DNA of 64,000 bases from positions 248,001 through 312,000 of IMG/VR virus record IMGVR_UViG_3300044712_002668. One strand, 5' to 3'. Under the pieces are notes generated by a model. It ran no database searches and was not told where the DNA came from. It worked only from the letters and a program-made list of their open reading frames with translations. Shown here in pieces: positions 8,127 to 54,059 of this stretch; position 1 is the first letter of the stretch; every line of letters starts with the position of its first letter. The translations under genes and the position numbers were made by a program.

Positions 8127-9125
8127 ATGACTCAAACACAATCAATCAAGACTTCAAAGAAAACTCCTAAAAAGGAATTCTACTCTCCAGCATCTCCCAA
8201 GACATATAGAGCTGAGAAACCTGAGGTTTGGGCATCTGAACGAATCATGAATTTCATGATGGAGCGTTTGGAAGCATATAAGAAGAATCCTGATGGGAAG
8301 AAGATTGTATTGCCATGGCAGGCTACTTGGAGCCGTTCAACGATTCTTCCCCGCAGACATAAGACCAATAGAGTTTATCATGGTTTGAATTTGATGATGC
8401 TTTTGATGACGGGTTATGGTTCTCCATTTTATTTTTCGTATAAGGATATTTCGGAGCTTGGTGGTAAGGTTATCAAGGGACAGCATGGTTGGCCGGTGAG
8501 TTTCTGGTTTGAGGTCAAGAAGGAGCTTGCTGATGGTACCAAGGAAGGCACTGGATATTGGAAGTGTAGATATTTCAATATCTTCAATCTGGAGCAGACT
8601 GAGGGTATCGACCCTGCCAAGCTGCGTAAGATTGTAGTTGAAGAGGATAAGGATCATAATCCAATTGAGGAGTGTGAGGCTATTGTGGCTGGGTATGAGA
8701 ATCCTCCCAAGATTGTTTTCAAGGGACAGCAGCCATGTTACAGACCTCTGCTGGATCAGGTTGATATTCCGGCAATCAAGAAGTTCAAGACTCCTGAAGC
8801 CTACTATGCAACGTTGTTCCATGAGTTGGCTCACTCAACTGGTTCTGACAAGCGGCTGAATCGTGAGACTCTGGTGAAGGTTGCGGGTTTTGGAAGCCAT
8901 CTCTATTCCGAGGAGGAGTTGGTTGCCGAAGCTTGTGCCGCTATGCTCTGTCGTAAGGTTGGGATTGAGAATACTGTCATTGATAACTCTCTGGCTTATA
9001 TTGAAAACTGGATGAAGGCGCTTACCCCTGAGGTATTGGCAACATCCATCAAGGCAGCAGGTAAGGCGTATGAGCGGATAGTGGGAAACAGCGAGGCGGA
9101 GGAGAACAATGACGGAGAAGAATGA
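8127..9125 (+). CDS. ardC: ArdC-like ssDNA-binding / zincin antirestriction protein
   Basis: PWQ, YHGLN, GGKVIKG, FNLEQ, YYATLFHELAHSTG, YSEEELVAE. Confidence 0.85.
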   Translation: MTQTQSIKTSKKTPKKEFYSPASPKTYRAEKPEVWASERIMNFMMERLEAYKKNPDGKKIVLPWQATWSRSTILPRRHKTNRVYHGLNLMMLLMTGYGSPFYFSYKDISELGGKVIKGQHGWPVSFWFEVKKELADGTKEGTGYWKCRYFNIFNLEQTEGIDPAKLRKIVVEEDKDHNPIEECEAIVAGYENPPKIVFKGQQPCYRPLLDQVDIPAIKKFKTPEAYYATLFHELAHSTGSDKRLNRETLVKVAGFGSHLYSEEELVAEACAAMLCRKVGIENTVIDNSLAYIENWMKALTPEVLATSIKAAGKAYERIVGNSEAEENNDGEE

Positions 9126-34888: not shown

Positions 34889-37144
34889 ATGATGCAGAAT
34901 CGCTATCCAGGTAAGTGTCAGAGTTGTAATGTTCCCTTGGCTGCTGGAGAAGGTTTCGCTTACAAGAACGGTTATCGTTGGCTTCAATGTTGTAACTCAA
35001 CCGCTTGTATCAATCGTCTGGGTTTGAAAGCCCCCGCTTCCGCTGATATTCGCGGAGAACGAAAGATTACCGAGATTGGTGAGATTATCATGGGATTTGA
35101 TAGGGATGCCGTTCCTCTTATCAAATCTCTTCCTGGGGCTCGTTGGAACCCTGACAATAAGCTTTGGACTGTCTCTGTTATTCCTCGTGACCTTCCCCGT
35201 GTCATTGAGGTTTGCGATCAGTTGAAGCTGGATATTCCAGAATCTCTCAGGGCTTCTTTGAATGCCGGAACCGTGGACAGCAACAAGGCCCGAGCGAGAG
35301 CCGAAGCTGCTCGCCGCCATGATGGCAAAACTTTGTTCGAGTTCCAAAAGGATGGCGTTGTTTTCTTGGCTCTGCACGATCATGCACTCCTAGCGGACGA
35401 TATGGGACTTGGAAAGAGCGTGCAGGCTCTTGTTGCTCTCCCTGATAATGCTCAGGTGCTTCTAATCTGCCCGGCTGCTGTAAAGTATAACTGGCAGAAC
35501 GAAGCCAAGATGTGGCGTCCCGAATTTGAAACCATCGTTTGTGAAGGCAAGGATTCCTTTGTTCTTCCCAAGCCTAATCAAATTGTTATCATCAATTATG
35601 AAATCCTTCCCGCCTTTCTGGTTCCCAAAGAAGTTGAAGGTAAACTCACCAAGAGTGGTAAGCCATATAAGGAAGCTCCCATTCCTGATGATATCAGAAA
35701 GGAATTGAAGAATGTTATTTTGATTGGGGATGAGTTCCATAAGGTAAAGAATTATAAGAGCATGATGTCCCAGAAGATTGGGGCTATGACCAAACTCTGC
35801 AAGGTTGTTTGGGCTCTTACCGGTACTCCTCTTATGACTCGCCCTCAGGATTTGTTTGGGATGTTGGCATCTGGCAACATGTATCCATTTGGTTCATGGG
35901 ACAAGTTTGTTGAGAGGTTCAACGGATATAGAGGGCAGTATGGAATAGTATTTGGGAATCCCAAGCCGGAAGTTCCGGAGATGTTGAAGCGAGTATCTAT
36001 TCGCCGTTTGAAGACTGAGGTTTTGAAGGATCTTCCCACGAAGATTTATAAGGATATCCTTGTTGATATTGATAAGACTTTGAAGAAGTATCTTGATAAG
36101 GTTACATTGGAGATTGCAATCAATCAGGGACATGTAATTACTGATGAAGAGATTGCTGATGCCAAAAAGAATATGGATGATGTGGCTTTGAAGATTAATA
36201 TGAATGACCTTCCTAACTTCAAGGAGTTCTCCACTATCAGGCGTATGTTGGCTGAGGCCAGAATCCCTGCCATGATGGAGATTGTTGAGAGTTATGAGGA
36301 TAGCGAAACTCCTCTGGTTGTTTTCTCCGCTCATACCAAGCCTCTTGAGGAACTTGGTAAGCGTGATGGTTGGGGTATTATTACTGGTGATACTCCCGCT
36401 GTTACTCGTGAAAAGGCCAAGCAGGATTTCCAAGCCGGTAAGTTGAAGGGTATCGCTGTTGCTATCAAGGCAGGTGGTGTGGGTATTACACTCACACATG
36501 CTAGTCATGCATTGTTTGTGGATTTGGATTGGACGCCTGGATTGAATATACAGGCTGAGGATCGTATTTGCCGGATTGGAGCAACAACCGAGAATGTATT
36601 GATTCAGAGGATGACATCAAATCATCCAATGGATCAGCATATTAATAAGTTGATTTGCAAGAAGATAGCATTGATGTATGAGGCATTGGACAAGTCAATC
36701 AAGGTCAAGCCGTTGAAGAAGCGGCCTGAGAAGATTGAATTGGTAGAGGAGACTGAGGCTGATATGTTGGCGCGAATTGAAGCGGCCGGCAAGGAAGCTG
36801 AAAAGCAATTTTACAAGGATAAGGTTCATGGAATTTTGGGAAGGGAGTTGGCAAGGGCAGAAGGAATACCGGAACCCAAGCTTACACCCAAGCGCAAGGA
36901 ATTGATATTGAGGGCTTTGGATTATATGGCATCTCGTTGTGATGGAGCTGAGAGCCGGGATTATATGGGTTTCAATAAGCCCGATGCGGCGATTGCTCAA
37001 TGGTTGTATGGAGCTGAGTTTGCAGAGGATGAAGTAATCTGGAGGGTTACCGAAAGAATTTTGAGTAGGTATTATAGGCAGCTTGTTACCATTGGTAAGG
37101 AGTTTGGAGAGGACTTTACTGCTATCTGGAAGCCAGATGTATAA
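34889..37144 (+). CDS. SNF2-family (SMARCAL1/HARP-like) helicase
   Basis: LLADDMGLGKS, DEFH, LTGTP, GVGITL, QAEDRICRIG. Confidence 0.9.
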   Translation: MMQNRYPGKCQSCNVPLAAGEGFAYKNGYRWLQCCNSTACINRLGLKAPASADIRGERKITEIGEIIMGFDRDAVPLIKSLPGARWNPDNKLWTVSVIPRDLPRVIEVCDQLKLDIPESLRASLNAGTVDSNKARARAEAARRHDGKTLFEFQKDGVVFLALHDHALLADDMGLGKSVQALVALPDNAQVLLICPAAVKYNWQNEAKMWRPEFETIVCEGKDSFVLPKPNQIVIINYEILPAFLVPKEVEGKLTKSGKPYKEAPIPDDIRKELKNVILIGDEFHKVKNYKSMMSQKIGAMTKLCKVVWALTGTPLMTRPQDLFGMLASGNMYPFGSWDKFVERFNGYRGQYGIVFGNPKPEVPEMLKRVSIRRLKTEVLKDLPTKIYKDILVDIDKTLKKYLDKVTLEIAINQGHVITDEEIADAKKNMDDVALKINMNDLPNFKEFSTIRRMLAEARIPAMMEIVESYEDSETPLVVFSAHTKPLEELGKRDGWGIITGDTPAVTREKAKQDFQAGKLKGIAVAIKAGGVGITLTHASHALFVDLDWTPGLNIQAEDRICRIGATTENVLIQRMTSNHPMDQHINKLICKKIALMYEALDKSIKVKPLKKRPEKIELVEETEADMLARIEAAGKEAEKQFYKDKVHGILGRELARAEGIPEPKLTPKRKELILRALDYMASRCDGAESRDYMGFNKPDAAIAQWLYGAEFAEDEVIWRVTERILSRYYRQLVTIGKEFGEDFTAIWKPDV

Positions 37145-38397: not shown

Positions 38398-38436
38398 ATG
38401 GCATCTCACTCCACCGGTAGTTTTACGATTGGTTTT
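38398..38436 (+). pseudogene. Orphaned 5' fragment of the ku gene
   Basis: Encodes MASHSTGSFTIGF versus the ku start MASHSTGSFVIGF; has its own AAGGAA RBS and an upstream TTGACA at 38323. Confidence 0.8.
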
Positions 38437-39328
38437 GTAGTTTATTCCAATCAGATTCCCAAATTGATTTAATTGTGTACCCGGCTTCTATTAATATCTT
38501 CTCTTTAAGAATTGTGTTATCGTAAAGAGCACCATAAGTTATTTTATTTTTTGGATTTATATCTGTAGGTTTGTATAGTTTAGGGTTACCATGCCAAGAA
38601 TCACCGTTGAATTCGTATACCGTTTTTGTTTCTGGATCATAACCATCAGCCTTAAATCTTTTTTCTCCAATATGAATGGTTACCTCTCTGTGTAATGGGT
38701 CATCTGGAATGCCTAGAGAATCCAACCATTTGTTTTGTTTGTATGTATTTAGACATTTAGGACATCCATTACCAGCTAAATGATTACTTGGACTTTGTTT
38801 AAAGCCTCCGTGTTTGTGACATGTTATTGTTATTTTTATTCTGTTATTTGTGTATACTACATTTTCATATGAATATTTTCCATTATGAATCTTATTAGCT
38901 TTAATGATAAATGATTCTTTATCCATGTTTGTAGTACCTCCACATTTTTGACATCCTTTACCAACCAAATGATTATGTGGTGTTTGTTCAAACTCTCCAT
39001 GCTCTTGACATACTATAATTACTTTTTTGTAATTTCCTATATATACAACTTTGTTGTATGAGTATTTTTCTCCATGAACTTTATTAGCCTTTTTAATAAA
39101 CTCTTCTGTATTTGAGCGCTTAGCGTTACCAATTTTATTTGGCATACATTTTGGACACCCCTGACCACGAAAATGACCGTCTGGTGTTTGCTCAAAGTTT
39201 CCATGTTTTTTACATGTTATTGTTATTTTTATTCTGTTATTTATGTATTTAGCGTTTTCATATGAGTATTCTCCGTCATGAATATTTGTCGCTTTTGTTA
39301 TAAATTCTTTTGTTGTAAGTCGTTTCAT
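38423..39328 (-). mobile_element. Putative homing endonuclease: three Cys/His repeats (DUF723/CapR-like) plus a PD-(D/E)XK/Vsr-like nuclease
   Basis: Three YSY..V.Y......I.C..HG.F.Q.P..H..G.GC.KC repeats; ADGYD..VYEFNGDSWHG. Confidence 0.75.
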
Positions 39329-39387: not shown

Positions 39388-40260
39388 ATGGCATCTCACT
39401 CCACTGGTAGCTTTGTAATTGGTTTCGGACCTCTCACGTGTATGGTAAAGACCTACGTTTCAGCATCACCAACTCGTATTGGGTTCAAGTGGATCAATAA
39501 GAAGACGGGTAATCTTGTTGGTCAGAAGAAGTTTGACAAGGTAACTAACGAGGAAGTTCAGCAAGCAGATATTATTAATGGATATGAATATTCCAAGGAT
39601 AAGTATCTACACTTTACTGATGTAGAGGTAGATAATATGCAGGCTACGAAGAAGGATACGATGGAGATTGCGGAGTTCGTTCCGATCAGTTCCATTGATC
39701 CGTTGCAGGTAGAGAAGACGTTTTACCTACAGCCTGATAAGGGTCAGGATGGTAATTACAAGTTGTTCTCTGTTGTTCTAGCCAAGTGTGGCAGGGCTGC
39801 TGTTGGTAAGTGGGTATCACGAGGCAAGGAACATCTTGTTGTGATTCGTGCTTATCAGCATGGAATTATTATGCACCAGATGTTCTATCATAATGAGGTG
39901 CGTGGTTTTGAGGATAAGTGTTCTGCTGTTCCGCTCAATGAGAGGAACGTAAAGATTGCTGAGGAAATGATTTCTTATGGTTTGAGTGAGACGTTTGATT
40001 CCAAGAAGTATGCAGATATGTTTGTTGATAAGTTGAATGCTGCCGTGGCAAAGAAGTTGGCCAATCCTGATGAGCCGATTACTGCTGATACCGGAGCTGC
40101 TTTGAAGGTTATTGATCAGGGCGATGCAATGCTCGCTTGGCTTGATGCAAAGCGTAAGGAGAAGGCCCAGCCTGTTGCCGAGCCTGTTGTTGAGAAGCCT
40201 GAGCCTCTCAAGTTGACCTCCAAGCCTGCCAAGAAGGCCAGGGCAAAGAAGGCTTCTTAA
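39388..40260 (+). CDS. ku: Ku DNA end-binding protein
   Basis: GSFVIGFG..., INGYEYSKDKY, IAEFVP..IDP, FYLQPD, basic C-terminal tail. Confidence 0.88.
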   Translation: MASHSTGSFVIGFGPLTCMVKTYVSASPTRIGFKWINKKTGNLVGQKKFDKVTNEEVQQADIINGYEYSKDKYLHFTDVEVDNMQATKKDTMEIAEFVPISSIDPLQVEKTFYLQPDKGQDGNYKLFSVVLAKCGRAAVGKWVSRGKEHLVVIRAYQHGIIMHQMFYHNEVRGFEDKCSAVPLNERNVKIAEEMISYGLSETFDSKKYADMFVDKLNAAVAKKLANPDEPITADTGAALKVIDQGDAMLAWLDAKRKEKAQPVAEPVVEKPEPLKLTSKPAKKARAKKAS

Positions 40261-43833: not shown

Positions 43834-44793
43834 CTATTTGATTTGATTATAAACATCTTTAAATAATCTTGCTATCTTTACAAGCTCACTTATATGTGAG
43901 CTTTTTTTATTCTTACCAAACACACCAGAGATATACTTTTCTGCTTCTTGCAGGGTTTTCAATGGTTCCTTCCTTAATACGGATTCGTGTTTGGTTGCTT
44001 TACCATGAGCCTTTTCATAATTATCCCCATCATAAATCATATGTTCACACTCTATGATTTCATGAATGAGTATAGGGATGAGTTCTTTCTTTTCATAGTG
44101 TGATTCAATCCATATCGTATTGTTTGGTACATAGGAATACCTTCCAGGGTTTCCTCCCATAACAAAATCAGTATCAAACTTCTGACGTACCAAATTACCA
44201 TCTACAAGATTTACTTTATAACCGTATACTTCGCCAATTTCTTTTGTAACAACATCTTTATCAGAGATGTTTTTATGTTTTTTATATTTATCCATTCTCT
44301 TTTCTGGAGAATCTTTCTCTTTCCATAAAACAATTATACGTTTATCTACGGGTTTTTTATGGTTATCCTTTGGAAATGTAAACCATATCGGAGCGAATTC
44401 TTTTTGTGTGATGATTTTATATTCACCAACTGAAGGATCCATTATCTCTATCTCTGTATCGTTGATGTCAGATACTACAGAATAATGAGAATCATCATTG
44501 CTAAACCACTCTACAATGATTTGATAATTCTCTTTCAATAATTTCTCTACTTCTTTAAAAGAAGAATTGTTTTTTATATAACCTTTAAGATTATATTTCT
44601 TGGCACCGCTTAAAAGATCTTCAGCTTCTATACCATGCTCTTCAGTGGCACCGATATTCTTGGCAATATCTTCCAACTCTTCATGGGTATTATAGAAATG
44701 CAGGATGCTTTTCAGACATGCCGGTCCACAGAAACCTGGGGTCTGATCAATCGCTATAGGTTTTTTATAAAACTTTTCTTCAGCTTTCGTCAT
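43834..44793 (-). CDS. Peptidase C39-like domain fused to an HExxE domain
   Basis: Q..GFCGPACL, SHYSVV, IMDPS; C-terminal VDG..VR...IWIE...HEIIE...AHGKA. Confidence 0.75.
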   Translation of the reverse strand: MTKAEEKFYKKPIAIDQTPGFCGPACLKSILHFYNTHEELEDIAKNIGATEEHGIEAEDLLSGAKKYNLKGYIKNNSSFKEVEKLLKENYQIIVEWFSNDDSHYSVVSDINDTEIEIMDPSVGEYKIITQKEFAPIWFTFPKDNHKKPVDKRIIVLWKEKDSPEKRMDKYKKHKNISDKDVVTKEIGEVYGYKVNLVDGNLVRQKFDTDFVMGGNPGRYSYVPNNTIWIESHYEKKELIPILIHEIIECEHMIYDGDNYEKAHGKATKHESVLRKEPLKTLQEAEKYISGVFGKNKKSSHISELVKIARLFKDVYNQIK

Positions 44794-44833: not shown

Positions 44834-47269
44834 ATGAAAGCAAACAAAGAACAGAATTTAAACAAGCATTTGTACTGTGTGATGCTTATGGCCATGCATT
44901 GTGCTGAATATCTTGGCGTCAATGATACGGCTCTCAAAGAGGTCATCGGGCTTTCTGCTTTCCTTCATGACGTAGGTAAGGCTACCAAATATTTTCAAAA
45001 CATCTCCCTCAGGGAAGAGAAGACCAGCACCAAAAAGTTTTTCGATCTTATTCGTGAACAGTATCCCCAATTTTCCGGAGAGGATGGTAAGGATTGGTAT
45101 CCGAGGCATAACGAAATCTCATGGTTGTGGGCGGCTCTACACGCTACCGGTAAGTCTCTGTTCAAGAAGGTTGGCCTCCAAGCTATCTATTGGCATCACG
45201 GAACCTTTGATATCAACCCTATCCGAGATACTGATACCAAATCCCTTGTAGAAGAATTGACCAAGTTCTCTCCCGATGAATGGAAAACCATTGACCAAAC
45301 AATCAAATCCCTTATTGATAATACAAACTTTCCTTTTGATATTACAAAGTATCTTGATGATAACATTGAACATTGTAAGATGTCACCTTTGTTTGATATT
45401 GAAGATAAGGCTGCCAATAATGGCATGATTGAAAACGCTCAGCGTTGGGTTATTCGTAGTTGTGTGATGTATGCTGATGCTACTGTTTCAAGGATGTCTT
45501 CCGATGAATTGAATGATCTAATTCTCAATAGAAATCCAGCTACTTATTTCAAGCCTTATTATCTCTCTGTGAAGCCTGAGTTTGTTTGTCCTGAAGGTTA
45601 CGATCCGGAACGTTTCAGGATTCAGAGTGAGATTTATAAGAGTTGTAATCATACTACGGTTGTAAAGGCTCCTGCTGGTTTCGGTAAGACCTTGATTGGT
45701 TTGATGTGGGGCCTGCTACATGGACAACAGTTCTATTGGGTTTGCCCTCGTAATGATGTTGCCCAAGGCGTTTTCGAAAACATCAAGGAAGAACTCCGTA
45801 GACTTAACATCAATATCAATGTTGAATTGTTCCTGACATCGGAACGTCAAGACTCATTTGGACCGAATGTACCGCATGTACATGGTACGTGTGACATTGT
45901 GGTAACGAACATTGATATGTTGATGGCTCCATTGCAGAGTCACAAGCATGCATGCAGGGTTTTTGATATCAATGCTCGTAACATTATCATGGATGAGTTC
46001 CATGAGTTGATTGGTGATGAAGGAATGTTTTCGGCCTTTATCAATTATATGAGGGCTCGCAATTTGATTTGCTCAAATACGAGAACCTTGCTCTTGTCAG
46101 CTACTCCTTCCGTCCTGAATGAACTTTGGGATAGCGATACAAAGCAAACCAGGCTTCTTCCAGATGATGAACATCATTATAAGGCTCAGCATGATAAGCC
46201 TTATTACTTCAAGTTCGCTACTGCAATGCCCACCAAGCCGTTGCCTGGCTCGTTGAGTATGTATTGCAGCATTTCCACTGTCATTGTAAATTACAATCCA
46301 AGAGTTCATACGGCAATTATTCACAGTCATTATCCAACGAATTACAAGAAGGACATTTTGAATGGAATTTTCAAGACCTTTGGAAAGGGAGGGGATAAGA
46401 ATGGGACTGTGATATCAGCGCCTATTCTACAGGCTGCATTTGATATTTCATTCAGGAGTATGTATAAGGCAGTTGAATCTCCTGAGGGAGACATTCAGCC
46501 ACTTGGGCGTGTGAATCGTTGGGGAGAGTTGGAGAGTGCAGAGGTTGTGTTGGTACCTTTGGCGGCTTCTAATCCTAGTGAACGGGGAGCAATCAATACC
46601 CGATATGATTTGGACCTGCACCGGGATTGGTTGAAGTATTTGAAGAACAATATAAAGTCAAAGGCTACGTTGGATGAGGTTTATTCTTTGTATAATGCTT
46701 ACAATAATGTTGCCAAGCCGAAGTTGATATCTTATTATTACAGGTGTTTGGATAAGGCAACTGAGAGATTGTCAAAGTTCTTCCCCAAGGACTTCGGAGT
46801 TTCCCGGCCTTCTCGTGATAATATCAAATCGGTTTCAAATCTGAGAAGTTATTCTCCATCATTCTTTATTGTAGTAAGGAATTTGAAGACCAAGGATTGG
46901 CATCCATTTGCTTTCAATATTCAGAACTATGATTTGGATGAGTGCATAAGTGAAAACCGGGAGAAGTTGGAAGCGTATACAATTAAAACTGTTATGGAGC
47001 ATTTGAATGAATTGAAGTTTGAGGATGGCGAATGTCATTTTGATTATAGTAAGATTTTGAATAGGTTCTTCAATCCAAAGAGGAAGAGTGAGAAGAAGAT
47101 TGGTGGCAAGCTTGTAAAGATAACTTCCAAGGTTCGTAAGAATTATAAGGCAGAAGATTTTATTGATTATATCAGGGAAACAAAAACGCCATTGCCGGTG
47201 TTTGATAGGTTCTTTGATCCTGTTCGTGGTTTGGTTAAGGAAGAGTTTTTGTACGCAATCAATTATTGA
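44834..47269 (+). CDS. cas3: Cas3 HD nuclease-helicase (no N-terminal Cas2 domain)
   Basis: KHL...LHDVGK HD domain, HHG, YAD; APAGFGKT, DEFH, SAT, QPLGRVNR. Confidence 0.92.
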   Translation: MKANKEQNLNKHLYCVMLMAMHCAEYLGVNDTALKEVIGLSAFLHDVGKATKYFQNISLREEKTSTKKFFDLIREQYPQFSGEDGKDWYPRHNEISWLWAALHATGKSLFKKVGLQAIYWHHGTFDINPIRDTDTKSLVEELTKFSPDEWKTIDQTIKSLIDNTNFPFDITKYLDDNIEHCKMSPLFDIEDKAANNGMIENAQRWVIRSCVMYADATVSRMSSDELNDLILNRNPATYFKPYYLSVKPEFVCPEGYDPERFRIQSEIYKSCNHTTVVKAPAGFGKTLIGLMWGLLHGQQFYWVCPRNDVAQGVFENIKEELRRLNININVELFLTSERQDSFGPNVPHVHGTCDIVVTNIDMLMAPLQSHKHACRVFDINARNIIMDEFHELIGDEGMFSAFINYMRARNLICSNTRTLLLSATPSVLNELWDSDTKQTRLLPDDEHHYKAQHDKPYYFKFATAMPTKPLPGSLSMYCSISTVIVNYNPRVHTAIIHSHYPTNYKKDILNGIFKTFGKGGDKNGTVISAPILQAAFDISFRSMYKAVESPEGDIQPLGRVNRWGELESAEVVLVPLAASNPSERGAINTRYDLDLHRDWLKYLKNNIKSKATLDEVYSLYNAYNNVAKPKLISYYYRCLDKATERLSKFFPKDFGVSRPSRDNIKSVSNLRSYSPSFFIVVRNLKTKDWHPFAFNIQNYDLDECISENREKLEAYTIKTVMEHLNELKFEDGECHFDYSKILNRFFNPKRKSEKKIGGKLVKITSKVRKNYKAEDFIDYIRETKTPLPVFDRFFDPVRGLVKEEFLYAINY

Positions 47270-47304
47270 AGTTCAATCAACCAACCAACAAGGAAAAAAA
47301 CAGC

Positions 47305-48417
47305 ATGTCAATCGCCAAGTCTCTGCTTCTTCGTGTCCTTTTCAATGGTGATGGAATCGTCAATTTTGATTCTCCGGATCAAAAGTATCTTTGGAACAAG
47401 TTGGAGGGGGCAGGTTTTATCAGGCACAATAATACCATGGTTGGAAAGGCCAGGTATGAGTCAAAAAAGGTAACTCGTCAGAATCAGGATAAAGAGGATT
47501 ATGAGAAGGAGGTTTATACACGGGTTCCAATCAATTCTGCAGACTGCATTCGTCATACCATGTATGAAGATGTGATGCGAACGCATCTTCCCAATGTTCA
47601 GCATGATGATGATTGGTTGATTCGTACCATTGCAAACCCTGCTTTCATCCAGCGTGGGTATATGTTCCCCCGTGCCAACAAGGAATCTTGGAAGCGCAAG
47701 TCTTCATTGGCTTTCGGTTATGCCAAGGGTATTACGCCAAGTGTTCCGGCAATTGAAACGTTTTCAAATTCTCAAGAAAGGGATAATGTTGAGAAGAGCG
47801 AGAGTGGTTCTGAGACATCTTTCTTCTCTCGTGAGGTTCGAGGACAAGTAAATTATGAAATGACTGGAGTAATTGATTTGGCTGAGCTTGGGTTTATCTC
47901 CTTGAGTGATGTTCATGATCGTTTGGGATTCCATCCCGATCTTGATGGTGAGTTTATTGAGATGTTCAAGAAGCATTTCAAGTTTGAGGATACGATTACT
48001 TCTGGGTATTTTGTTCGTGAAGGTGATGCTTATGAGATTCCTGAGCAGGGTATTCTGCTTGGGGACAAGTATGTTATCGCCATGGTTGAGGATATCCTGA
48101 AGCGTTTGGCCAGGTTCAATTTGGTTCGTACCACTACTGGTTTTCTTCAGACTGCCAAGGTTGAGGTTATGGTTGTCAAGGATCCTTTGACTGACCGTGT
48201 TACCAATACTGATGGTTGGATTAATGTTTTTGATAATGGTAAGTTTTCTGTTGACTTTTTGAAGGGTCTCAAGATTGAGCGTGTTTATAATGAGACCTCT
48301 ATTGAGGAGGCTATTGAGAAGGTTCGGCATTATAAGGAACTGAAGAATGTTGATGAGCCGGTTGTGGAAGCCAAGCCCCCGAAGAAGCCGCGTGGCAAGA
48401 AAGAGGCGGCGGCATGA
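47305..48417 (+). CDS. cas7: Cas7, type I-F2 (I-Fv)-like
   Basis: GDGIVNFD, INSADCIRH, QRGYMFP, KRKSSL, TSFFSR, LGFISLSDVHDR, EQGILL match, in order, motifs recalled from Shewanella Cas7fv; AAGGAA RBS. Confidence 0.85.
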   Translation: MSIAKSLLLRVLFNGDGIVNFDSPDQKYLWNKLEGAGFIRHNNTMVGKARYESKKVTRQNQDKEDYEKEVYTRVPINSADCIRHTMYEDVMRTHLPNVQHDDDWLIRTIANPAFIQRGYMFPRANKESWKRKSSLAFGYAKGITPSVPAIETFSNSQERDNVEKSESGSETSFFSREVRGQVNYEMTGVIDLAELGFISLSDVHDRLGFHPDLDGEFIEMFKKHFKFEDTITSGYFVREGDAYEIPEQGILLGDKYVIAMVEDILKRLARFNLVRTTTGFLQTAKVEVMVVKDPLTDRVTNTDGWINVFDNGKFSVDFLKGLKIERVYNETSIEEAIEKVRHYKELKNVDEPVVEAKPPKKPRGKKEAAA

Positions 48418-49316
48418 GCAAGTATATTCTGCTTCTGGATTTTCAAAACGCAGGAATCTTTAAAAAGTATTGGCATAAAACAGAGCCTCGCTCTGCTTCC
48501 GGTGATGACCGTATTTTTGATGGAAAGAATTCCGATTATCGTCGTAAGGATCAATGGATTGAACCTTCTACGGTAACCTTTCATTATAGTTTTATTGAGA
48601 ATGTTTTGAGAGTTCTTGCCGGGCGTAGACCCGTTCCTAAGTATCGCTCATCCTGTGTTGAACATGATGATGATATAATCAGGTTGGCTAAAAATAGTTA
48701 TGTAAAAATTGATGCATTGGTCAGGCATTGGGAGGGGAAGCCTGACACATTTGCCACAGAGACCATGACAGTCAGGAAGGCGTCATGGAATGCATGGAAT
48801 CAGGGTTGTATAGTTGGTTGGAAAAGGTTGGAGAATTTGTTGCCTGAGGATTTGTTCAATGAATTCTGTAGATTGGTTGAGAATATTTTTGGAATTGATT
48901 ATTATAGAAAGGTTACGTTGAGTAAGGTTATTGAGAAGATTCATACGATGAAGAATGATAAGAGGATCATATCATTGTGTGACAGGGCGGTAGCCGTTTC
49001 GTGTACAAATTTCAAGCATCTATTGTTGGAAACTGGGCAGCCAACATTTTTTCAAGCCAGTTATAAGAAGTATGGGGATTCAACGGAAGCGAATGTTTGT
49101 ATGAGAACCTTGACTGTGAAGGGAATTGCTGATGTAAGCAGATTGGATGGTATGATTGGAGTACCTGTAACGGCTGAAGAGTTGGAGATGTTCCGCAAGG
49201 GTCGTGGATTTGCCACATTGTTTGATGGGGGTTTGGTAACTATAAACAAGGTTGTAGATTTGGAGTATTCAAACACTGGTGTAGTTTTGAATGGGTATAC
49301 GCAAGCACTACAATGA
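48414..49316 (+). CDS. cas5: Cas5, probably Cas5fv-like (enlarged, replacing Cas8)
   Basis: Position in operon, 300 aa, IENVLRVLAG helix, helical insert, C-terminal GFATLFDGGLVTI Gly loop. Confidence 0.65.
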   Translation: MSKYILLLDFQNAGIFKKYWHKTEPRSASGDDRIFDGKNSDYRRKDQWIEPSTVTFHYSFIENVLRVLAGRRPVPKYRSSCVEHDDDIIRLAKNSYVKIDALVRHWEGKPDTFATETMTVRKASWNAWNQGCIVGWKRLENLLPEDLFNEFCRLVENIFGIDYYRKVTLSKVIEKIHTMKNDKRIISLCDRAVAVSCTNFKHLLLETGQPTFFQASYKKYGDSTEANVCMRTLTVKGIADVSRLDGMIGVPVTAEELEMFRKGRGFATLFDGGLVTINKVVDLEYSNTGVVLNGYTQALQ

Positions 49317-49834
49317 ACCTGTATAAAATCCACAAGGCATTTGCGAATCCTTATCAGAACCACCAGGCATTGAAGAACTTGTTTCTGGGAGAGGGGCGGG
49401 TTCTTTTCCAGAACTTGGGTTCTTCTTTATTGGTGCTTTCTCAAATAAAGTTGAGCGATGAATACCGGAATAACTTTTTGATTGATTTTCTTGATATTGA
49501 TAATTGTTTGAATGGTGACATTATGAATTTTTCTATCAGGTTGAATGCTTGCAAGGGCAGTCAGGGCAAGCGATATACGTTGAAGGAGGATGAATTTGAG
49601 AGGTGGGTTGATTGGAAGATGGGACAAGCTGGAGTTTCATTGGTTAAGAAGAGCATTCATAATGAGGGAGTTATTGTTAGTGACAGGCAGGGTGGGCATT
49701 GTTATCATGCTTCATTGTTTGTATCTGGTATATTGAAGGTTGAGGATAGGGTTTTGTTCAGCAAATCGGTTGAGCTTGGCATTGGACATGGCAAAGCTTT
49801 CGGGTTCGGGTTGTTGAATGTGTTTACGTGTTAG
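49313..49834 (+). CDS. cas6: Compact Cas6e-like crRNA endonuclease
   Basis: YQNHQALKNLF, FSIRLNACK, GILKVED...GIGHGKAFGFGLL. Confidence 0.85.
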   Translation: MNLYKIHKAFANPYQNHQALKNLFLGEGRVLFQNLGSSLLVLSQIKLSDEYRNNFLIDFLDIDNCLNGDIMNFSIRLNACKGSQGKRYTLKEDEFERWVDWKMGQAGVSLVKKSIHNEGVIVSDRQGGHCYHASLFVSGILKVEDRVLFSKSVELGIGHGKAFGFGLLNVFTC

Positions 49835-51460
49835 AGTTCTCTACTGGTTTTTGTAGGGATTGAAATAAATCTGTCGCTCAGCGCTCCTTTGCCTCGTTGA
49901 ATTGAATTCCCTACTATATTATGTAGGGGTTGAAATGAGCAATTGGCCATAGCTTTCAGGGAACAATACGATCATTGAATTCCCTACTATATTATGTAGG
50001 GGTTGAAATCCCCCAACGACCTGGAGTTTTTACAGATCCAATTAAATTCCCTACTATATGTAGGGATTGAAACCGAATCAGGATATGTCGTCGTGGTTGT
50101 GTATCGGTATAATTGAATTCCCTATTATATAGGGATTGAAAAGTCGCATTCGAAGTCAAGACCGCTATTGGTAAAGTATTCCTACTATATGTAGGGATTG
50201 AAACACCCTGCGTTGGGCCCGAAAGAGACCGGCGGTTGTCCGATTGAATTTCCTACTGTATGTAGGGATTGAAATATAGGAGGCTCCCTCGGGGATGTGT
50301 CAGTGCGAACATTGAATTCCCTGCTATGTGTAGGGATTGAAATGATGTGGTCGGTGCCATATTCCTACCGCGTGACTGAATTTCCTACTGTATGTAGGGA
50401 TTGAAACTCCGTTGGTTCCCGCGAGATGGTTATCGTGGAGGTATTGATTCCCTATTATATAGGGATTGAAATAACGTTTTTGAAGGTCCGTCGCGTATAG
50501 CTTAGTTTAGTTTCCTACTATATGTAGGGATTGAAACGTGCGTATGACATAGAAGTGTGTTGCCGTGATGGTTCCCTGCTGTATGTAGGGATTGAAATCT
50601 TAGTTTCACCGGAATTCAGGTGATGACATTTATTTCCCTGCTTTATGTAGGGATTGAAATGCGAGCAGTCTAAATTCTTCGGCAGTCAGTTTGGAGTCGG
50701 TTTTCCTACCAAGGTAGGGATTGAAATGGTGGACATAACCAGAATAGTCGTGGACTTGTAGTTAATCCCTAATAAAATAGGGGTTGAAATGTAGTTGGCG
50801 GATTTAAAGGAGACCAACTAAATCTCCCTACAATATGTAGGGGTTGAAACTTTCTCTCTTTTCCGCGTCCATCAGTCTTTATGATTCCCCGCTATATGCA
50901 GGGATTGAAATCCGCAACCACCGTTTAGTCCTGCTAACATTACGTAGTTCTCCGCTATATGCGGAGGTTGAAACCCTACTCCGTCTTTCAGTGACGCTAC
51001 CGTTTTTATTCCCTATTTATGTAGGGGTTGAAATAAGGATGGATCCAATCATTGGGATGTTCTATTGTCTCCCTATTTATGTAGGGATTGAAACAGCGGA
51101 AGAACTCAATCTTTCCAAGTTTGATTGATAGTTTCCCTACTAAATATAGGGATTGAAATGCTATTTATGATATGATTCAGCGTGTCAAAATAGTTTTCCT
51201 ACTGTAGTGTAGGGATTGAAACTCCACTGCATCTAGTACAGCGAATGATTCTTAATGTCCCTGCTAATAAGCAGGGGTTGAAACTACCCTGATAGACTGC
51301 CTTCTATTGATTATGATGATTCCCTACAATATGTAGGGATTGAAATCGTCAGGCTATTGATGAGAATGCCATTGTTCAATGTCCCTGCTGATGTAGGGGT
51401 TGAAATCAAAGCACGCCTTCGGGCAGTACAATTAGAATCATCTCCCTACACCATGTAGGG
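49834..51460 (+). CRISPR. CRISPR array, 26 degenerate repeats and 25 spacers
   Basis: Consensus about (ATTGAA)TTCCCTACTATATGTAGGG[A/G]TTGAAA[C/T]; period 60-73 nt; last repeat lacks TTGAAA. Confidence 0.95.
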
Positions 51461-51731
51461 ACTCGGAGAATACAATGAAAGATAAAGATACTCTAAAGCC
51501 TTTATACATCTGGCTCTCCTGCACCCATGCACGAGGCGATTCCTACGAGGAGGCTTTCCAAGAAGCCTTGACCAAGAAGCCGGAAATTGCTAACCTTACT
51601 TGGAAGGGTGTCCCTCTAGGTCATTACGAAGCAACAAATTCTTTCTATAATCAAACTTATAATTTCATCCCTAACGGAAAGTTCTCAGAATTTGTTTTTG
51701 AGGCTCAATGATAATATTTCAGTATTGATTT

Positions 51732-52268
51732 ATGAATATTGAGGCCATAGAAAATATTGTTTCTATGTATTGTATAGCGGCTGAAGAGGAAGATAAACAT
51801 CGTCGTCATTTGGACTGGGATGATTTAAGAGCTGATGTACAATCCAGAGGGAAAAAGAAAGATCCAAAGTTGAAGCTGTCCGGTAAATGGAAGGTCTTTG
51901 TACGTAAAGAAGGACCATTCAAAATATATGCTGTTGATGGAAAATGGATTAGAAACAATCTTTCCGTGATATTCAATCATGGGGGACATGGTTTTGTACA
52001 TGAGTTTATTCCAGCAGATGAAATATGGATTGCAACAAATCATCATGATGAAGGAAAGAATAGCTCCTGTGGGTGTGGTAAAGGAAATAGTAAAGTATCA
52101 AAAGAATATTTTGATAGTTGTGTAGAACATGAAATTGAAGAATTCAAGCATATGAAAAAAGGAAAGCCTTATAAACCAGCTCATCAAAAAGCCTTGGATG
52201 CTGAGAAAAATCTCGGTCTATTGAAGAGTATGGTTGGTGATAGCGGTTCCACACCATTGAAACTCTAA
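51732..52268 (+). CDS. HExxE-domain protein, paralog of the C-terminal domain of 43834..44793
   Basis: VDGKWIR...GGHG...IPADEIWI...HEIEE...AHQKA. Confidence 0.6.
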   Translation: MNIEAIENIVSMYCIAAEEEDKHRRHLDWDDLRADVQSRGKKKDPKLKLSGKWKVFVRKEGPFKIYAVDGKWIRNNLSVIFNHGGHGFVHEFIPADEIWIATNHHDEGKNSSCGCGKGNSKVSKEYFDSCVEHEIEEFKHMKKGKPYKPAHQKALDAEKNLGLLKSMVGDSGSTPLKL

Positions 52269-52610
52269 CAAATGGTATCAAAATGAGCTACGAAGGTCAC
52301 ATCCAGAATATCTGTAAGAATGGTCATTTGTTTGAATGTGATTCCTATATACCCAAAACAACTTGCCCAGTATGTCTAGCTTCAATTGCTTGGTCAAATG
52401 AAGTGGATGATACAAATGGCGAAGAATATGGTCATGTTGATCTGGATCCTTTCCGTAGAAAAGCTGGTTCAAGAGTGACTGAACAAACCAGTAAGGGTTG
52501 GAGAACAATAGAATACCATGCCGAATACAATATTCCTCCTAAAGATGTAGAGAAAACCTTCCGTGATGAAGATGGTCATGTTCTTTCTATAAAGAATTAT
52601 CCAGAATAAT

Positions 52611-53006
52611 ATGCAAACTTTTCTTCCCTACCCAGATTTCAAGAAGTCTGCAAAGATTCTGGATTTCCGTAGGCTTGGAAAACAAAGACTGGAATGCGTT
52701 ACCATTCTAAGAGGTAAATGGCCAAATCATTCAGTTTCCAAGATGTGGCTTGACTATCACTACCAATTGTGCGAATATGCTAAAGAGATCTGTTTAGAGT
52801 GGAGAAGAAGAGGCTATAAGGATGTTCAGTATGATGTTGTTTGTGAGATGCAAAAACATCTTATAGATACAGGGCTTCCTCCCTGGTTCGGTAATAAAAC
52901 TTTTCATCGTGCTCATAAAAGTAATCTTGTCCGTAAGAAGCCTGATTATTATAGAAAATACTTCCCTGATGTTCCCGATAATCTCCCCTATCTATATCCG
53001 AAGTAA
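52611..53006 (+). CDS. Pyrimidine-dimer DNA glycosylase / endonuclease V-like protein
   Basis: MQTFLPYPDF..SA..LD..RLGKQRLE, HSVSKMW, EWRRRGY, PPWFG. Confidence 0.85.
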   Translation: MQTFLPYPDFKKSAKILDFRRLGKQRLECVTILRGKWPNHSVSKMWLDYHYQLCEYAKEICLEWRRRGYKDVQYDVVCEMQKHLIDTGLPPWFGNKTFHRAHKSNLVRKKPDYYRKYFPDVPDNLPYLYPK

Positions 53007-53015
53007 GGTAAACAT

Positions 53016-54059
53016 ATGCACGAGAAAATGAATAAGGTTTTGGCTGGCCTTGGTATCAATGGTAAGTGCATCCTCGCTAACCAACACCGTCATCTTGCTT
53101 ATTTCGATATATCTCTTGAACCGCGTACTTCTATTCGTACCCTGGAAAGGAATGCCCGAGAGATAGCCTTGGGCATTCGTAGCAAGACCACACCTATTGT
53201 TAAGGTGATTCCCGAGGAGGGAGTTGTAAGGCTTCAGGTAGCAATGGAGGATGCCAAGCCTATTCTTCATAAATCTATTTACAATCGTACATTTCAGGTA
53301 AAGGAGATTCTTCCATTTATCCTTGGCGAGGATGAAACGGGCAACAAGCTTGTTATGGATATGGTAAAGAATCCTCATCTTCTTATTGCGGGTGGTACAG
53401 GTTCTGGCAAGTCCGTTCTACTACATAATCTTATTGCGAATGCTATTTATCTTCGAGCAATCAAGTTCACCAATACCGATTTGATTCTGGTTGATCCCAA
53501 GCGTGTGGAGTTCAACTTCTATAATGATCCTTTGTTTCCGTTTATTCATATTGAGAACACGTATGAAGGTTGTGTAGAGATGCTTGAGGAGATGGTGTTG
53601 GTCATGGAGCGAAGGTATGCTCATATGGCTAGTATCAATGTCCGTAGTGTTGAGGATGATCCTGGTTTGTTTGTATTCAAGATGATTGTGATTGATGAGG
53701 TTTCCGACCTTATTCTGCAGGATAAGGAGAAGCATCTTCATGATTTGTTGATTACTCTGGCTCAGAAGGGCCGAGCTGCTGGTATCTATATTGTTCTGGC
53801 TACTCAGCGTCCCAGTGTGGATATTATTACTGGTACTATCAAGGCTAATTTCCCTGGCCGGATTGCTTGTAAGACTGCTTCCCGTATTGATTCAAAGGTT
53901 ATTCTTGATGAAATTGGAGCCGAGAGTTTGCTGGGCCGAGGCGATGCCATCCTGAAGAACATGGAACATGATAGGGTCAGGTTTCAGGTTGCCTATACGG
54001 ATGAGAATCAGATTAAATCTACCTATAAGTTCTTTACTGAATACTACAGGGCAGCATGA
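53016..54059 (+). CDS. FtsK/SpoIIIE ATPase (no transmembrane domain)
   Basis: PHLLIAGGTGSGKS, VDPKRVE, IDEVSD, GRAAGI..LATQRP, GAESLLGRGD. Confidence 0.9.
   Translation: MHEKMNKVLAGLGINGKCILANQHRHLAYFDISLEPRTSIRTLERNAREIALGIRSKTTPIVKVIPEEGVVRLQVAMEDAKPILHKSIYNRTFQVKEILPFILGEDETGNKLVMDMVKNPHLLIAGGTGSGKSVLLHNLIANAIYLRAIKFTNTDLILVDPKRVEFNFYNDPLFPFIHIENTYEGCVEMLEEMVLVMERRYAHMASINVRSVEDDPGLFVFKMIVIDEVSDLILQDKEKHLHDLLITLAQKGRAAGIYIVLATQRPSVDIITGTIKANFPGRIACKTASRIDSKVILDEIGAESLLGRGDAILKNMEHDRVRFQVAYTDENQIKSTYKFFTEYYRAA

What the first reader, a model, noticed from the sequence alone, without database searches (positions are those of the whole stretch)
49834..51460. CRISPR array conserved in structure rather than sequence
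Seen: almost every repeat differs along the whole array, yet stems are kept by compensatory changes: CCCTAC/GTAGGG, CCCTAT/ATAGGG, CTCCGC/GCGGAG (about 50950), CCCTGCT/AGCAGGG (about 51260), CCTACC/GGTAGG (about 50705). Loop lengths vary, while TTGAAA is invariant in 25 repeats. Cas1-Cas2 duplication normally keeps repeats identical. Inference: an old, fixed guide set under selection for Cas6 processing, which implies stable targets. Standard CRISPR finders may miss or fragment it.
Basis: partly seen in the sequence, partly recalled or inferred. Interest (0 to 1): 0.8.

Follow-up and report, generated by a model that had tools for sequence, protein, structure and literature searches.

The report
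Leaderless phage CRISPR array with diverged repeats
A 336-kb environmental phage carries a 26-unit CRISPR array whose repeats have nearly all drifted apart in sequence while keeping the same RNA hairpin and 8-base handle, apparently because the array can no longer add spacers but is still used.

Summary
Window 49835-51468 (+) holds 25 repeats ending in [A/G]TTGAAA[C/T/A], plus a 26th that keeps only the hairpin. 23 of 25 repeats are distinct. The 7-bp stem pairs in 179 of 182 cells, which none of 20,000 column shuffles reaches, and four pairs show double-sided changes. All but three one-sided changes give G.U on the + strand RNA. Loops are 3-8 nt, the 5' flank is almost free, and TTGAAA is invariant.

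The array follows directly after a cas3-cas7fv-cas5fv-like-cas6 operon on a 335,988-bp IMG/VR viral contig. It starts at the cas6 stop codon with no leader. Cas3 lacks the Cas2 fusion, and no Cas1, Cas2 or Cas4 lies in the 64 kb. Relatives have the same operon but a ~200-nt leader and uniform repeats.

Best reading: acquisition has stopped, and the repeats drift under selection for Cas6 cleavage and handle binding.

"Fixed guide set" is only partly right. Strains from other samples share long array stretches at about 99% identity, but also show a repeat-to-repeat deletion, an internal block replacement and a swapped repeat variant. No spacer target was found.

This is a new variant of a known kind, of moderate interest.

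The parts
44834..47269 (+). cas3 (HD nuclease + DEAD/DEAH helicase), 811 aa, without the N-terminal Cas2 domain of canonical I-F Cas2-3
   Evidence: PADLOC Cas3fv 1.4e-67, aligned from profile position 112; Pfam Cas3_HD, DEAD, Cas3-like_C_2; TIGR01596 3.8e-14
47266..48417 (+). cas7fv-like backbone subunit, 383 aa
   Evidence: NCBIfam Cas7fv 6.8e-23 (81.5 bits, below the 200-bit cutoff); PADLOC Cas7fv 3.4e-18; PDB 5o6u Cas7fv 6.6e-9; homologs carry PF28157 Cas7fv-like
48414..49316 (+). cas5fv-like subunit (probable), 300 aa
   Evidence: No sequence-family hit. AF2 model pLDDT 73.9. Foldseek top hits are 9g44_B and 5o6u_F (prob 0.95/0.80, TM ~0.3). VIA-align Z 7.5/7.2, and all nine top chains are Cas5 proteins. 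Same position in every relative.
49313..49834 (+). cas6, Cas6e/CasE-like endoribonuclease, 173 aa, C-terminal glycine-rich loop GHGKAFGFGLL
   Evidence: Pfam PF08798 6.2e-17; TIGR01907 casE 1.8e-13 (51.3 bits, above the 45.2 cutoff); PADLOC Cas6e 6.8e-20
49835..51468 (+). CRISPR array: 25 functional-looking repeats (R01-R25) and 25 unique spacers, closed by terminal unit R26. No leader; transcribed strand is +.
49901..50472 (+). cas6-proximal block R02-R10: still shows the 36-nt repeat form (ATTGAAT + hairpin + handle) seen in relatives, with longer units (62-73 nt)
   Evidence: 5' flank pairwise identity 0.59 here against 0.34 in R11-R25; mean repeat alignment score 18.8 against 14.2; relatives' 36-nt repeats
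50509..51406 (+). distal block R11-R25: only about 28 nt conserved (T + 6-bp stem + loop + handle), units 60-67 nt, most diverged stems (R17, R18, R23)
51441..51468 (+). terminal unit R26: intact 7-8 bp hairpin, but the handle is replaced by ACUCGGAG, which supplies GGAG upstream of the ATG at 51475
51475..51711 (+). 78-aa ORF of unknown function starting 7 nt after R26, same strand. Listed as the array's downstream boundary and probable co-transcript, not as a cas gene.
   Evidence: no family hit; no terminator-like site between cas6 and 51961

Best explanation
This is the CRISPR array of a minimal type I-F2 (I-Fv)-like interference module (Cas3, Cas7fv-like, Cas5fv-like, Cas6e-like Cas6) carried by a ~336-kb environmental phage. 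The module has no adaptation part: no Cas1/Cas2/Cas4 nearby, Cas3 without its Cas2 domain, and the ~200-nt leader present in relatives is missing, so the first repeat abuts the cas6 stop codon.

Inferred mechanism. The array is transcribed on the + strand, probably by read-through from the cas operon. Cas6 binds each hairpin and cuts at its 3' base. Each crRNA then carries the 8-nt 5' handle A/G-UUGAAA-Y, a guide of roughly 32-37 nt, and the next repeat's hairpin at its 3' end. Cas5 and Cas7 assemble on it and Cas3 degrades matching DNA.

Because no new units are copied from a leader-proximal template, nothing re-homogenises the repeats. Each repeat mutates on its own and is filtered only by what the RNA needs. 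The handle stays invariant. The basal C-C-C/G-G-G pairs are nearly fixed. The upper stem is kept by G.U intermediates and double changes. The loop and 5' flank are free and tend to shrink. Recombination and gene conversion between repeats that are still similar continue to delete or exchange units, so units flanked by dissimilar repeats persist preferentially.

Shown: anatomy, covariation, absence of a leader, absence of an adaptation module in the window, contrast with relatives, sharing of the array between strains. Inferred: transcription, Cas6 cleavage site, activity, cessation of acquisition.
For: - Cas gene identities.
- Array directly after the cas6 stop, no leader. Relatives with the same operon have ~200-nt leaders, 36-nt repeats, 11 identical leader-proximal copies and degeneration only at the trailer.
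- No Cas1/Cas2/Cas4 among 96 other ORFs.
- Covariation well beyond shuffles and slid controls.
- 21 one-sided stem changes give G.U on the + strand RNA and only 3 cells are unpaired.
- Conservation gradient: handle 0.92 (TTGAAA 25/25) > arms 0.79-0.84 > 5' flank 0.38.
- R26 keeps the hairpin, which the last crRNA needs, but not the handle, which nothing needs.
- Every variant folds into the same hairpin.
- Strain differences in the cas genes are 11 synonymous to 5 non-synonymous.
- Array stretches are identical in an independent study and ~99% identical in freshwater strains.
- One strain variant is a deletion between two of the most similar repeats (R06/R09, 17 shared bases).
- Published background: almost all huge-phage CRISPR systems lack Cas1/2/4 (PMC7162821). 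Repeat-mutation hotspots coincide with better spacer retention, and deletions by repeat misalignment greatly outnumber point mutations (PMC12839519). The I-Fv Cascade tolerates altered guide length (PMC4937334, abstract).
Against: - No RNA data: neither transcription nor processing of any unit has been seen.
- Only 64 of 336 kb were examined, so Cas1-Cas2 could lie elsewhere in the genome or be borrowed from the host. Relatives keep uniform repeats although no Cas1/2 lies within 8-10 kb of their arrays.
- Strain X4 has a different spacer inside the array, and R17 differs at many positions between strains that are 98-99% identical. Change is therefore not only slow point drift, and 'frozen' is too strong.
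- Repeat variants are scattered along the array and do not form a ladder, which pure leader-end history plus drift does not predict.
- No target was found for any spacer.
- The Cas5 assignment rests on Z < 8.
Confidence: 0.72

Rival explanations
1. Heterogeneity is itself the selected trait. In a phage that cannot replace lost spacers, repeat divergence is favoured because it suppresses misalignment and recombination between repeats, hard-wiring a guide library. This would be a natural counterpart of engineered non-repetitive arrays. It shares the anatomy of the best explanation but replaces passive drift with positive selection or survivorship.
For: The only clean deletion seen between strains joins two of the most similar repeats, R06 and R09. 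With 25 spacers the array is far larger than the median of six repeats reported for phage arrays (PMC7162821). Published analyses link repeat mutations to spacer retention and find deletions much more frequent than mutations (PMC12839519). The most diverged half (R11-R25) is the part shared almost unchanged between habitats.
Against: Adjacent repeats are not less alike than random pairs; if anything slightly more (P(>=)=0.07). R02 and R03 are identical neighbours. All repeats still share exact runs of 11-12 nt on average, enough for slippage. Drift plus purifying selection explains the data without extra assumptions. No rate measurement exists.
Confidence: 0.3
2. The array is a mosaic that is still being rebuilt by recombination or gene conversion with other arrays (co-infecting relatives, or within itself). 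The compensatory states arose in different, internally uniform arrays and were then brought together, so the guide set is neither old nor fixed.
For: Strain X4 carries one unrelated 39-nt spacer in place of three units, and an R19-type repeat where the window has R17. R17 looks like a hybrid of R18 and the consensus. Variants recur at a distance (R05~R10, R06=R11, R16~R24; lag-5 P=0.009 uncorrected). R23's stem and tail equal the consensus repeat of relative L003.
Against: No uniform array carrying any of these variants was found. The relatives recovered are only 27-49% identical in Cas7 and have much more different repeats. IMG/VR and 185,579 genomes contain no second array of this repeat type. 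Long stretches of the array (S17-S25) are collinear and ~99% identical across habitats. A mosaic origin would not remove the need for selection on the hairpin.
Confidence: 0.25
3. The array is a decaying relic that no longer works, and the hairpins survive only because too little time has passed.
For: No leader, no adaptation genes, no detectable targets, no expression data.
Against: Decay would hit handle, stem and flank alike. Instead TTGAAA is 25/25, 98% of stem cells pair, four pairs changed on both sides, and the 5' flank is near random. All four cas ORFs are intact, with an excess of synonymous differences between strains. The terminal unit has lost exactly the part that is dispensable.
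Confidence: 0.05
4. Artefact or non-CRISPR repeat: a metagenomic assembly collapsing many strains, or an unrelated family of tandem hairpins.
For: The window comes from a metagenome assembly. TRF reports no tandem repeat.
Against: Contigs from an independent study match with zero differences across array segments, and two freshwater samples match at ~99%. The position, 8-nt handle, unique 34-45 nt inter-repeat segments and homology to relatives' canonical arrays are all CRISPR-specific.
Confidence: 0.02

Closest known systems
Type I-F2 / I-Fv minimal CRISPR-Cas (Shewanella putrefaciens CN-32; PDB 5o6u, 9g44)
   Same: Effector built from Cas7fv-like, Cas5fv-like and Cas6 without large or small subunits, plus Cas3. 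The crRNA has an 8-nt 5' handle and a 3' hairpin. Tolerance of different guide lengths has been reported (PMC4937334).
   Different: Cas6 is of the Cas6e/CasE family, not Cas6f. Cas3 has no Cas2 fusion. No Cas1. The repeat is not the 28-nt I-F type (handle AUUGAAAY, ancestral length 36 nt). Cas7 scores far below the NCBIfam equivalog cutoff. The system is carried by a huge phage, and no cellular relative was found.
Huge-phage CRISPR-Cas systems lacking adaptation genes (Al-Shayeb et al. 2020, PMC7162821)
   Same: Phage-borne, without Cas1/Cas2/Cas4, and presumed to be used against competing phages or host functions.
   Different: Those arrays are described as compact (median six repeats). This one has 25 spacers. 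That paper does not mention wholesale divergence of repeats with compensatory stem changes.
Trailer-end repeat degeneration in ordinary arrays, and repeat-mutation surveys (Mitrofanov et al. 2026, PMC12839519)
   Same: Old repeats that are no longer copied accumulate mutations, and mutated repeats coincide with better-retained spacers. Relatives L001 and L009 show this ordinary form.
   Different: Here degeneration covers the whole array, not the last one to six units. It is visibly filtered for structure. The survey does not analyse stems or compensatory changes (no occurrence of these terms).
Structure motifs with compensatory pairs among CRISPR repeat families (Kunin et al. 2007; CRISPRmap, PMC3783184)
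   Same: Repeat hairpins conserved through compensatory base-pair changes, interpreted as Cas6 recognition elements.
   Different: Those comparisons are between arrays of different genomes, each internally uniform. Here the complete series (G-C, G.U, A-U; C-G, U.G, U-A) sits within one array.
Atypical or divergent repeats of CRISPR-associated transposons and CreTA/ectopic repeats (from general knowledge; PMC9458426 for CreTA)
   Same: Diverged repeats that still load the effector and are kept for a fixed, non-adaptive guide.
   Different: Those involve one or two special units with a dedicated regulatory or homing role, not a 25-spacer array, and Cas3-mediated interference is often avoided.

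Membership tests
CRISPR array (class 1, Cas6-processed) | Regularly spaced direct repeats separated by unique spacers of similar length | tested here: met
   25-26 units, period 60-73 nt, 25 unique inter-repeat segments with no similarity to each other
CRISPR array (class 1, Cas6-processed) | Adjacent cas genes, including a Cas6 endoribonuclease | tested here: met
   cas3-cas7-cas5-like-cas6 ends at 49834 and the array starts at 49835
CRISPR array (class 1, Cas6-processed) | Near-identical repeats maintained by Cas1-Cas2 duplication, with an AT-rich leader | tested here: not met
   23 of 25 repeats distinct; no leader; no Cas1/Cas2 in the window. Relatives meet this feature.
CRISPR array (class 1, Cas6-processed) | Repeat RNA forms the Cas6 hairpin followed by an 8-nt handle; crRNAs are produced | tested here: inconclusive
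   Hairpin and handle are predicted for every unit and supported by covariation. Production of crRNAs is not testable here (no RNA data).
Type I-F2 (I-Fv) | Cas7fv backbone protein | tested here: inconclusive
   Best family in NCBIfam and PADLOC, and PDB 5o6u at 6.6e-9, but 81.5 bits against a 200-bit cutoff; homologs carry Pfam PF28157 Cas7fv-like
Type I-F2 (I-Fv) | Cas5fv replacing the large subunit; no Cas8, no small subunit | tested here: inconclusive
   No extra gene between cas3 and cas6. The 300-aa protein's best fold matches are Cas5fv chains, Z 7.5/7.2, TM ~0.3.
Type I-F2 (I-Fv) | Cas6f (Csy4-type) processing enzyme and 28-nt I-F repeat | tested here: not met
   Cas6 matches Cas6e/CasE above the curated cutoff (TIGR01907 51.3 > 45.2; PF08798). 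The repeat handle AUUGAAAY and the 36-nt ancestral form differ from I-F.
Type I-F2 (I-Fv) | Cas1 and Cas2-3 fusion | tested here: not met
   The Cas3 alignment starts at Cas3fv profile position 112 with the HD domain at residue 4. No Cas1/Cas2 Pfam hit in 96 other ORFs. The rest of the 336-kb genome was not examined.
Type I-E | Cas6e together with Cse1, Cse2, Cas7e, Cas5e | tested here: not met
   Only Cas6 is I-E-like; no Cse1/Cse2; Cas7 is fv-like
Type IV | Csf1-3 effector with DinG or no nuclease, no Cas3 | tested here: not met
   A full HD + helicase Cas3 is present. Type IV models give only marginal hits (DinG 4.6e-4, type IV Cas6 1e-6, far below the Cas3fv and Cas6e scores).

The most novel reading that the evidence does not exclude
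A huge phage has turned an adaptive array into a hard-wired, inherited guide library. After losing leader and adaptation genes, repeat diversification was favoured, or survived preferentially, because it blocks repeat-mediated spacer loss. Cas6 recognises only the hairpin shape, the basal C-G pairs and the handle. The array would then be a natural non-repetitive CRISPR array and a one-locus record of how far a Cas6 substrate can drift. The few changes between strains would come from leader-independent exchange of internal units.
Probability: 0.3. Interest if true: 0.7.

Novelty: new variant of a known kind. Interest (0 to 1): 0.55.

Why it matters
First, the array acts as a natural mutational scan of a Cas6/Cascade substrate. 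Twenty-three variants retained in one array mark which positions must keep their sequence (handle UUGAAA, third stem pair), which need only pair (upper stem), and which are free (loop length 3-8, 5' flank). That gives ready-made designs for stable, non-repetitive multiplex arrays for a compact Cas8-less type I effector.

Second, it shows what may happen to a CRISPR array once adaptation stops but interference is still useful. This applies to the many phage and plasmid systems without Cas1-Cas2, and to the proposed link between repeat mutations and spacer retention.

Third, arrays like this may be under-detected by tools that expect near-identical repeats, so phage-borne guide sets could be under-counted.

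Tried and rejected
- Tandem Repeats Finder on 48000-53000 found nothing relevant.
- A plain MAFFT alignment of the repeats put the 5' arms out of register because loop lengths differ. I replaced it with a structure-anchored parse and a covariance-model alignment.
- My first greedy hairpin parse mis-set R17 and R19; these were corrected by hand.
- Nucleotide searches of the cas operon against cultured phages and plasmids gave no match.
- Searching the whole array against the same collections at E<=10 gave only chance-level 22-31 nt hits, E>=0.5.
- blastn-short of the spacers against the masked window and 30 relative loci gave only 12-17 nt chance matches.
- Six spacer patterns with every sixth base free, scanned in IMG/VR, hit only the source contig.
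- The Cas7 profile against 185,579 species genomes found no relative.
- The repeat motif in the same collection gave 40 isolated single hits and no array.
- Rfam gave no CRISPR-DR family, only a sub-threshold snoRNA hit.
- The 300-aa protein had no hit in Pfam, NCBIfam, PADLOC or PDB sequences.
- The promoter scan was not above shuffles.
- The test for neighbour similarity among repeats was inconclusive.
- L007 was uninformative, being a contig end that is probably chimeric after the first repeat.
- Considered and rejected: a type IV system, because Cas3 is present; a segmental duplication explaining the lag-5 echo, because the spacers are unrelated; a 6-nt periodicity in the handle-to-hairpin distance, because the values are continuous from 34 to 45.
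Full report
**1. What is there**

Between 49835 and 51468 on the + strand lie 26 short repeat units. Twenty-five of them end in [A/G]TTGAAA[C/T/A], with TTGAAA starting at 49860 ... 51400 and a period of 60-73 nt. TTGAAA occurs 25 times in these 1.6 kb and 55 times in the remaining 62 kb. The 26th unit (51441-51468) has the hairpin but ends in ACTCGGAG. Tandem Repeats Finder reports nothing. A gapless repeat finder splits the array into seven overlapping families, the largest with 21 copies of a 20-nt core. A covariance model built from ten 29-nt repeats recovers all 25 units and nothing credible elsewhere in the window.

**2. Test of the observation**

Each unit, parsed from its 3' anchor, has five parts: a variable 5' flank; a T; a 6-nt arm (consensus CCCTAC); a loop of 3-8 nt; the complementary arm (GTAGGG); and then A or G followed by TTGAAA and one more base. 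Counting the T:A/G pair, the stem is 7 bp.

- Of 182 stem cells in 26 units, 179 form a standard pair. Shuffling each 3' column among units gives 172.7 +- 1.1, and none of 20,000 shuffles reaches 179.
- The pair-count tool, run on an independent model-made alignment that drops some cells of R05/R10 as gaps, gives 98.5% paired against 95.7 +- 0.6 (0/500). It finds three pairs with changes on both sides (3/500) and five such cells (0/500). Sliding the 3' partner by 1-3 columns leaves only 37-60% paired.
- Double-sided changes: pair 2 C-G to U-A (R18); pair 4 U-A to C-G (R18); pair 5 A-U to G-C (R17, R18, R23); pair 6 C-G to U-A (R05, R10).
- The wobble intermediates are present in the same array: U.G at pairs 1, 2 and 6, and G.U at pair 5 in R08, R12, R13 and R25.
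- Twenty-one one-sided changes give G.U on the + strand RNA. Only three cells are unpaired (R17 C.A, R15 A.A, R21 C.A). On the opposite strand those 21 would be C.A mismatches, so the selected molecule is the + strand transcript.
- All 17 variants folded give the same hairpin in the same register, -6.8 to -12.8 kcal/mol, with the tail unpaired.
- Twenty-three of 25 repeats are distinct.

**3. How conservation is distributed**

Mean pairwise identity is 0.38 in the 8 nt before the stem, 0.79 and 0.84 in the two arms, and 0.92 in the tail. In the tail, TTGAAA is 25/25 and only the last base varies. The third stem pair (C-G) is invariant, and the two pairs below it are C-G or U.G except in R18.

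The terminal unit keeps a perfect hairpin but not the handle. That is what function predicts: the last crRNA needs the hairpin at its 3' end, and no crRNA needs a handle after it. Its tail supplies GGAG seven bases before the ATG of the next ORF at 51475.

**4. Context**

Directly upstream, and co-directional with overlapping stops and starts, are four genes:

- Cas3 with HD and helicase domains (44834-47269). PADLOC Cas3fv gives 1.4e-67, aligned from profile position 112, so there is no Cas2 domain.
- A Cas7fv-like protein (47266-48417). NCBIfam Cas7fv gives 6.8e-23, and PDB 5o6u Cas7fv gives 6.6e-9.
- A 300-aa protein with no sequence-family hit (48414-49316).
- A 173-aa Cas6 of the Cas6e/CasE family (49313-49834). 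TIGR01907 scores above its curated cutoff.

An AlphaFold model of the 300-aa protein, built on 11 orthologs (pLDDT 73.9), finds the Cas5fv chains of the two solved minimal I-F2/I-Fv complexes first with Foldseek (prob 0.95 and 0.80, TM about 0.3). VIA-align also ranks them first (Z 7.5 and 7.2), followed only by other Cas5 proteins down to rank 9. This agrees with a Cas5fv-like subunit but is not decisive.

The cas6 stop codon is at 49832-49834 and the first repeat begins at 49835, so there is no leader. No terminator-like site lies between cas6 and 51961, and promoter-like sites are not enriched. A scan of the 96 other ORFs of 80 aa or more returned 18 Pfam families, none of them Cas1, Cas2 or Cas4.

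**5. Origin**

The Cas7 gene matches at 100% on IMGVR_UViG_3300044712_002668, a 335,988-bp viral contig. Homologs, at 27-49% identity, lie on viral or metagenomic contigs of up to 392 kb and 463 kb, next to typical huge-phage genes. None was found among 185,579 species-representative genomes, and no cellular array with this repeat motif was found there either. The window itself carries ArdA, ArdC, Ku, an ATP-dependent ligase, PcfJ, a DenV-like glycosylase, an SNF2 helicase and an FtsK-like ATPase.

**6. Relatives as a control**

Every relative with enough sequence has the same Cas3-Cas7-Cas5-like-Cas6 order and no Cas1/Cas2 within 8-10 kb. Their arrays are conventional.

- L003 has a ~210-nt leader, eleven identical 36-nt repeats (GTAAAAGTCCCTGCCGAATAGTGCAGGGGTTGAAAC) and one degenerate terminal unit.
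- L001 has a ~200-nt leader, eleven identical 36-nt repeats and then about six increasingly degenerate trailer units.
- The others have uniform repeats at a strict 65-66 nt period.

So the clade's normal state is uniform repeats copied at the cas6-proximal end. The window is the only locus recovered that is heterogeneous throughout, and it is also the only one without a leader.

The window's R02/R03 still have the 36-nt form with an 8-nt loop. The ATTGAAT 5' flank is recognisable through R10 and lost further on. Repeats in the cas6-proximal half are more alike than those in the distal half. This polarity suggests ordinary leader-end growth in the past, followed by loss of the leader.

**7. Strain comparison**

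Near-identical DNA occurs in a second rhizosphere study and in several freshwater metagenomes. Contigs were laid on 46900-52700.

- The second rhizosphere run matches with no differences, including 50712-50996 and 51343-51597.
- Two freshwater runs match at about 97-99% in the cas genes and equally in the array: 50895-51242 with 3 differences, 51213-51451 with 4, and 51030-51295 with 2. Spacers S17-S25 are therefore shared across habitats.
- In the cas genes the differences are 11 synonymous to 5 non-synonymous, as expected for genes in use.
- One freshwater contig joins 50187 to 50391, a 203-nt deletion between R06 and R09, which share 17 bases at the joint.
- Another contig replaces 50660-50824 (S13-R14-S14-R15-S15) by 39 unrelated bases.
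- The same contig reads an R19-like repeat where the window has R17, and lacks 25 nt covering the R12 hairpin.

Divergence among repeats within the array is far greater than divergence between strains, so the heterogeneity is old. The array is nonetheless still edited, by recombination and conversion and not by leader-end addition.

**8. Spacers**

The 25 inter-repeat segments are unique, 34-45 nt long (measured from handle to hairpin), with GC 0.31-0.60 against 0.40 for the window. None matches the rest of the window, any relative locus, or cultured phages or plasmids beyond chance. Six were tested in IMG/VR with every sixth base free and hit only the source contig. The targets remain unknown.

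**9. Mechanism proposed**

Established knowledge of Cas6e/Cas6f systems is that Cas6 binds the repeat hairpin and cuts at its 3' base, leaving an 8-nt 5' handle that Cas5 holds, and that Cas7 coats the guide. From that and the anatomy here, I infer crRNAs of the form A/G-UUGAAA-Y + guide + next hairpin, read from a cas-operon transcript.

With no leader and no Cas1-Cas2, repeats are no longer copied from one template. Each then evolves alone under RNA-level constraints, which yields exactly the observed gradient: handle, then basal pairs, then upper stem (pairing only), then loop and flank. The fall of unit length and handle-to-hairpin distance along the array (Spearman -0.66 and -0.65, p < 0.001) may reflect deletion bias in the oldest units down to a functional minimum near 35-36 nt. 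That is close to the I-F geometry, as far as I recall it.

Published work supports two further ingredients. The I-Fv Cascade accepts altered guide lengths (PMC4937334). Repeat mutations coincide with spacer retention, while misalignment deletions are frequent (PMC12839519). That survey of 56,343 arrays does not discuss stems or compensatory changes. CRISPRmap reports compensatory pairs only between arrays. Huge-phage systems without adaptation genes are known, but their arrays are described as compact.

**10. Verdict**

It overstates fixity, and it cannot yet be extended to 'stable targets'.

The system is best described as a Cas1-less, Cas2-less, leaderless type I-F2-like module with a Cas6e-type nuclease on a huge phage. 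It works like I-Fv but fails three membership features of that subtype (Cas6f, Cas2-3, Cas1).

Novelty: a new variant of a known kind. Interest is moderate (0.55), because the array offers a natural map of Cas6/Cascade substrate tolerance and a concrete case of what happens to an array after adaptation is lost.

Noticed in passing
L001:12545-12590 and L003:7873-7917: The leaders of relatives carry a conserved inverted repeat just after cas6 (TTGCGAG[C/A]GGT ... ACCGCTCGCAA) and a later CTCGCGAAG box. This may be a regulatory or integration-host element. It is entirely absent from the window.
   Followed up: no
window 51461-51477: The tail of the terminal repeat (ACTCGGAGAATACAATG) provides a GGAG ribosome-binding site and the ATG of the 78-aa ORF 51475-51711. 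The array is thus wedged inside an operon, and Cas6 cleavage at R26 would cut just upstream of that ORF's RBS.
   Followed up: partly
window 50116-50598 (R05-R12): Repeat variants echo at a distance of five units (R05~R10, R06=R11, R07~R12; permutation P=0.009, uncorrected), although the intervening spacers are unrelated. Unexplained.
   Followed up: partly
window 49835-51468: Unit length and handle-to-hairpin distance shrink steadily from the cas6 end (41-45 nt) to the far end (35-36 nt). This could be deletion bias in old units or two generations of repeat length (36 against ~28 nt).
   Followed up: partly
window 51255-51284 (R23) versus L003:8067-8827: R23's stem and handle (CCCTGC/GCAGGG, GTTGAAAC) are the same as the consensus repeat of relative L003. 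G-C may therefore be the ancestral state of pair 5, with G.U and A-U as later steps preserved in the same array.
   Followed up: no
L007:10740-12110: At the end of a 392-kb IMG/VR contig, the leader and one repeat are followed by unrelated GC-rich coding-like sequence. This is probably a chimeric assembly join at the array.
   Followed up: no
L003:15338-16375; L004:227-3375: TnpB/IS605 OrfB (Cas12f-like TNB domain) genes lie within a few kb of the CRISPR module in one relative lineage. L005, which encodes the same Cas7 as L003, has only about one repeat where L003 has twelve.
   Followed up: no
L027:6625-6756: Two consecutive units of a distant relative's array carry the same spacer, i.e. a duplicated repeat-spacer unit.
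   Followed up: no
window 8127-9125, 34889-37144, 38423-39328(-), 39388-40260, 43834-44793(-), 53016-54059: The neighbourhood holds an ArdC-like anti-restriction protein, an SNF2 helicase, an HNH endonuclease, Ku, a C39-type peptidase and an FtsK/SpoIIIE-like ATPase. ArdA, an ATP-dependent DNA ligase, PcfJ, a DenV-like glycosylase and a DUF7873 protein are also in the window, but I did not map them to individual ORFs.
   Followed up: partly
L001, L003, L008, L009, L018, L020, L021, L025 (arrays listed): Relatives keep uniform leader-proximal repeats although no Cas1/Cas2 lies within 8-10 kb. The source of their adaptation activity (a distant phage locus or the host) is unknown.
   Followed up: no
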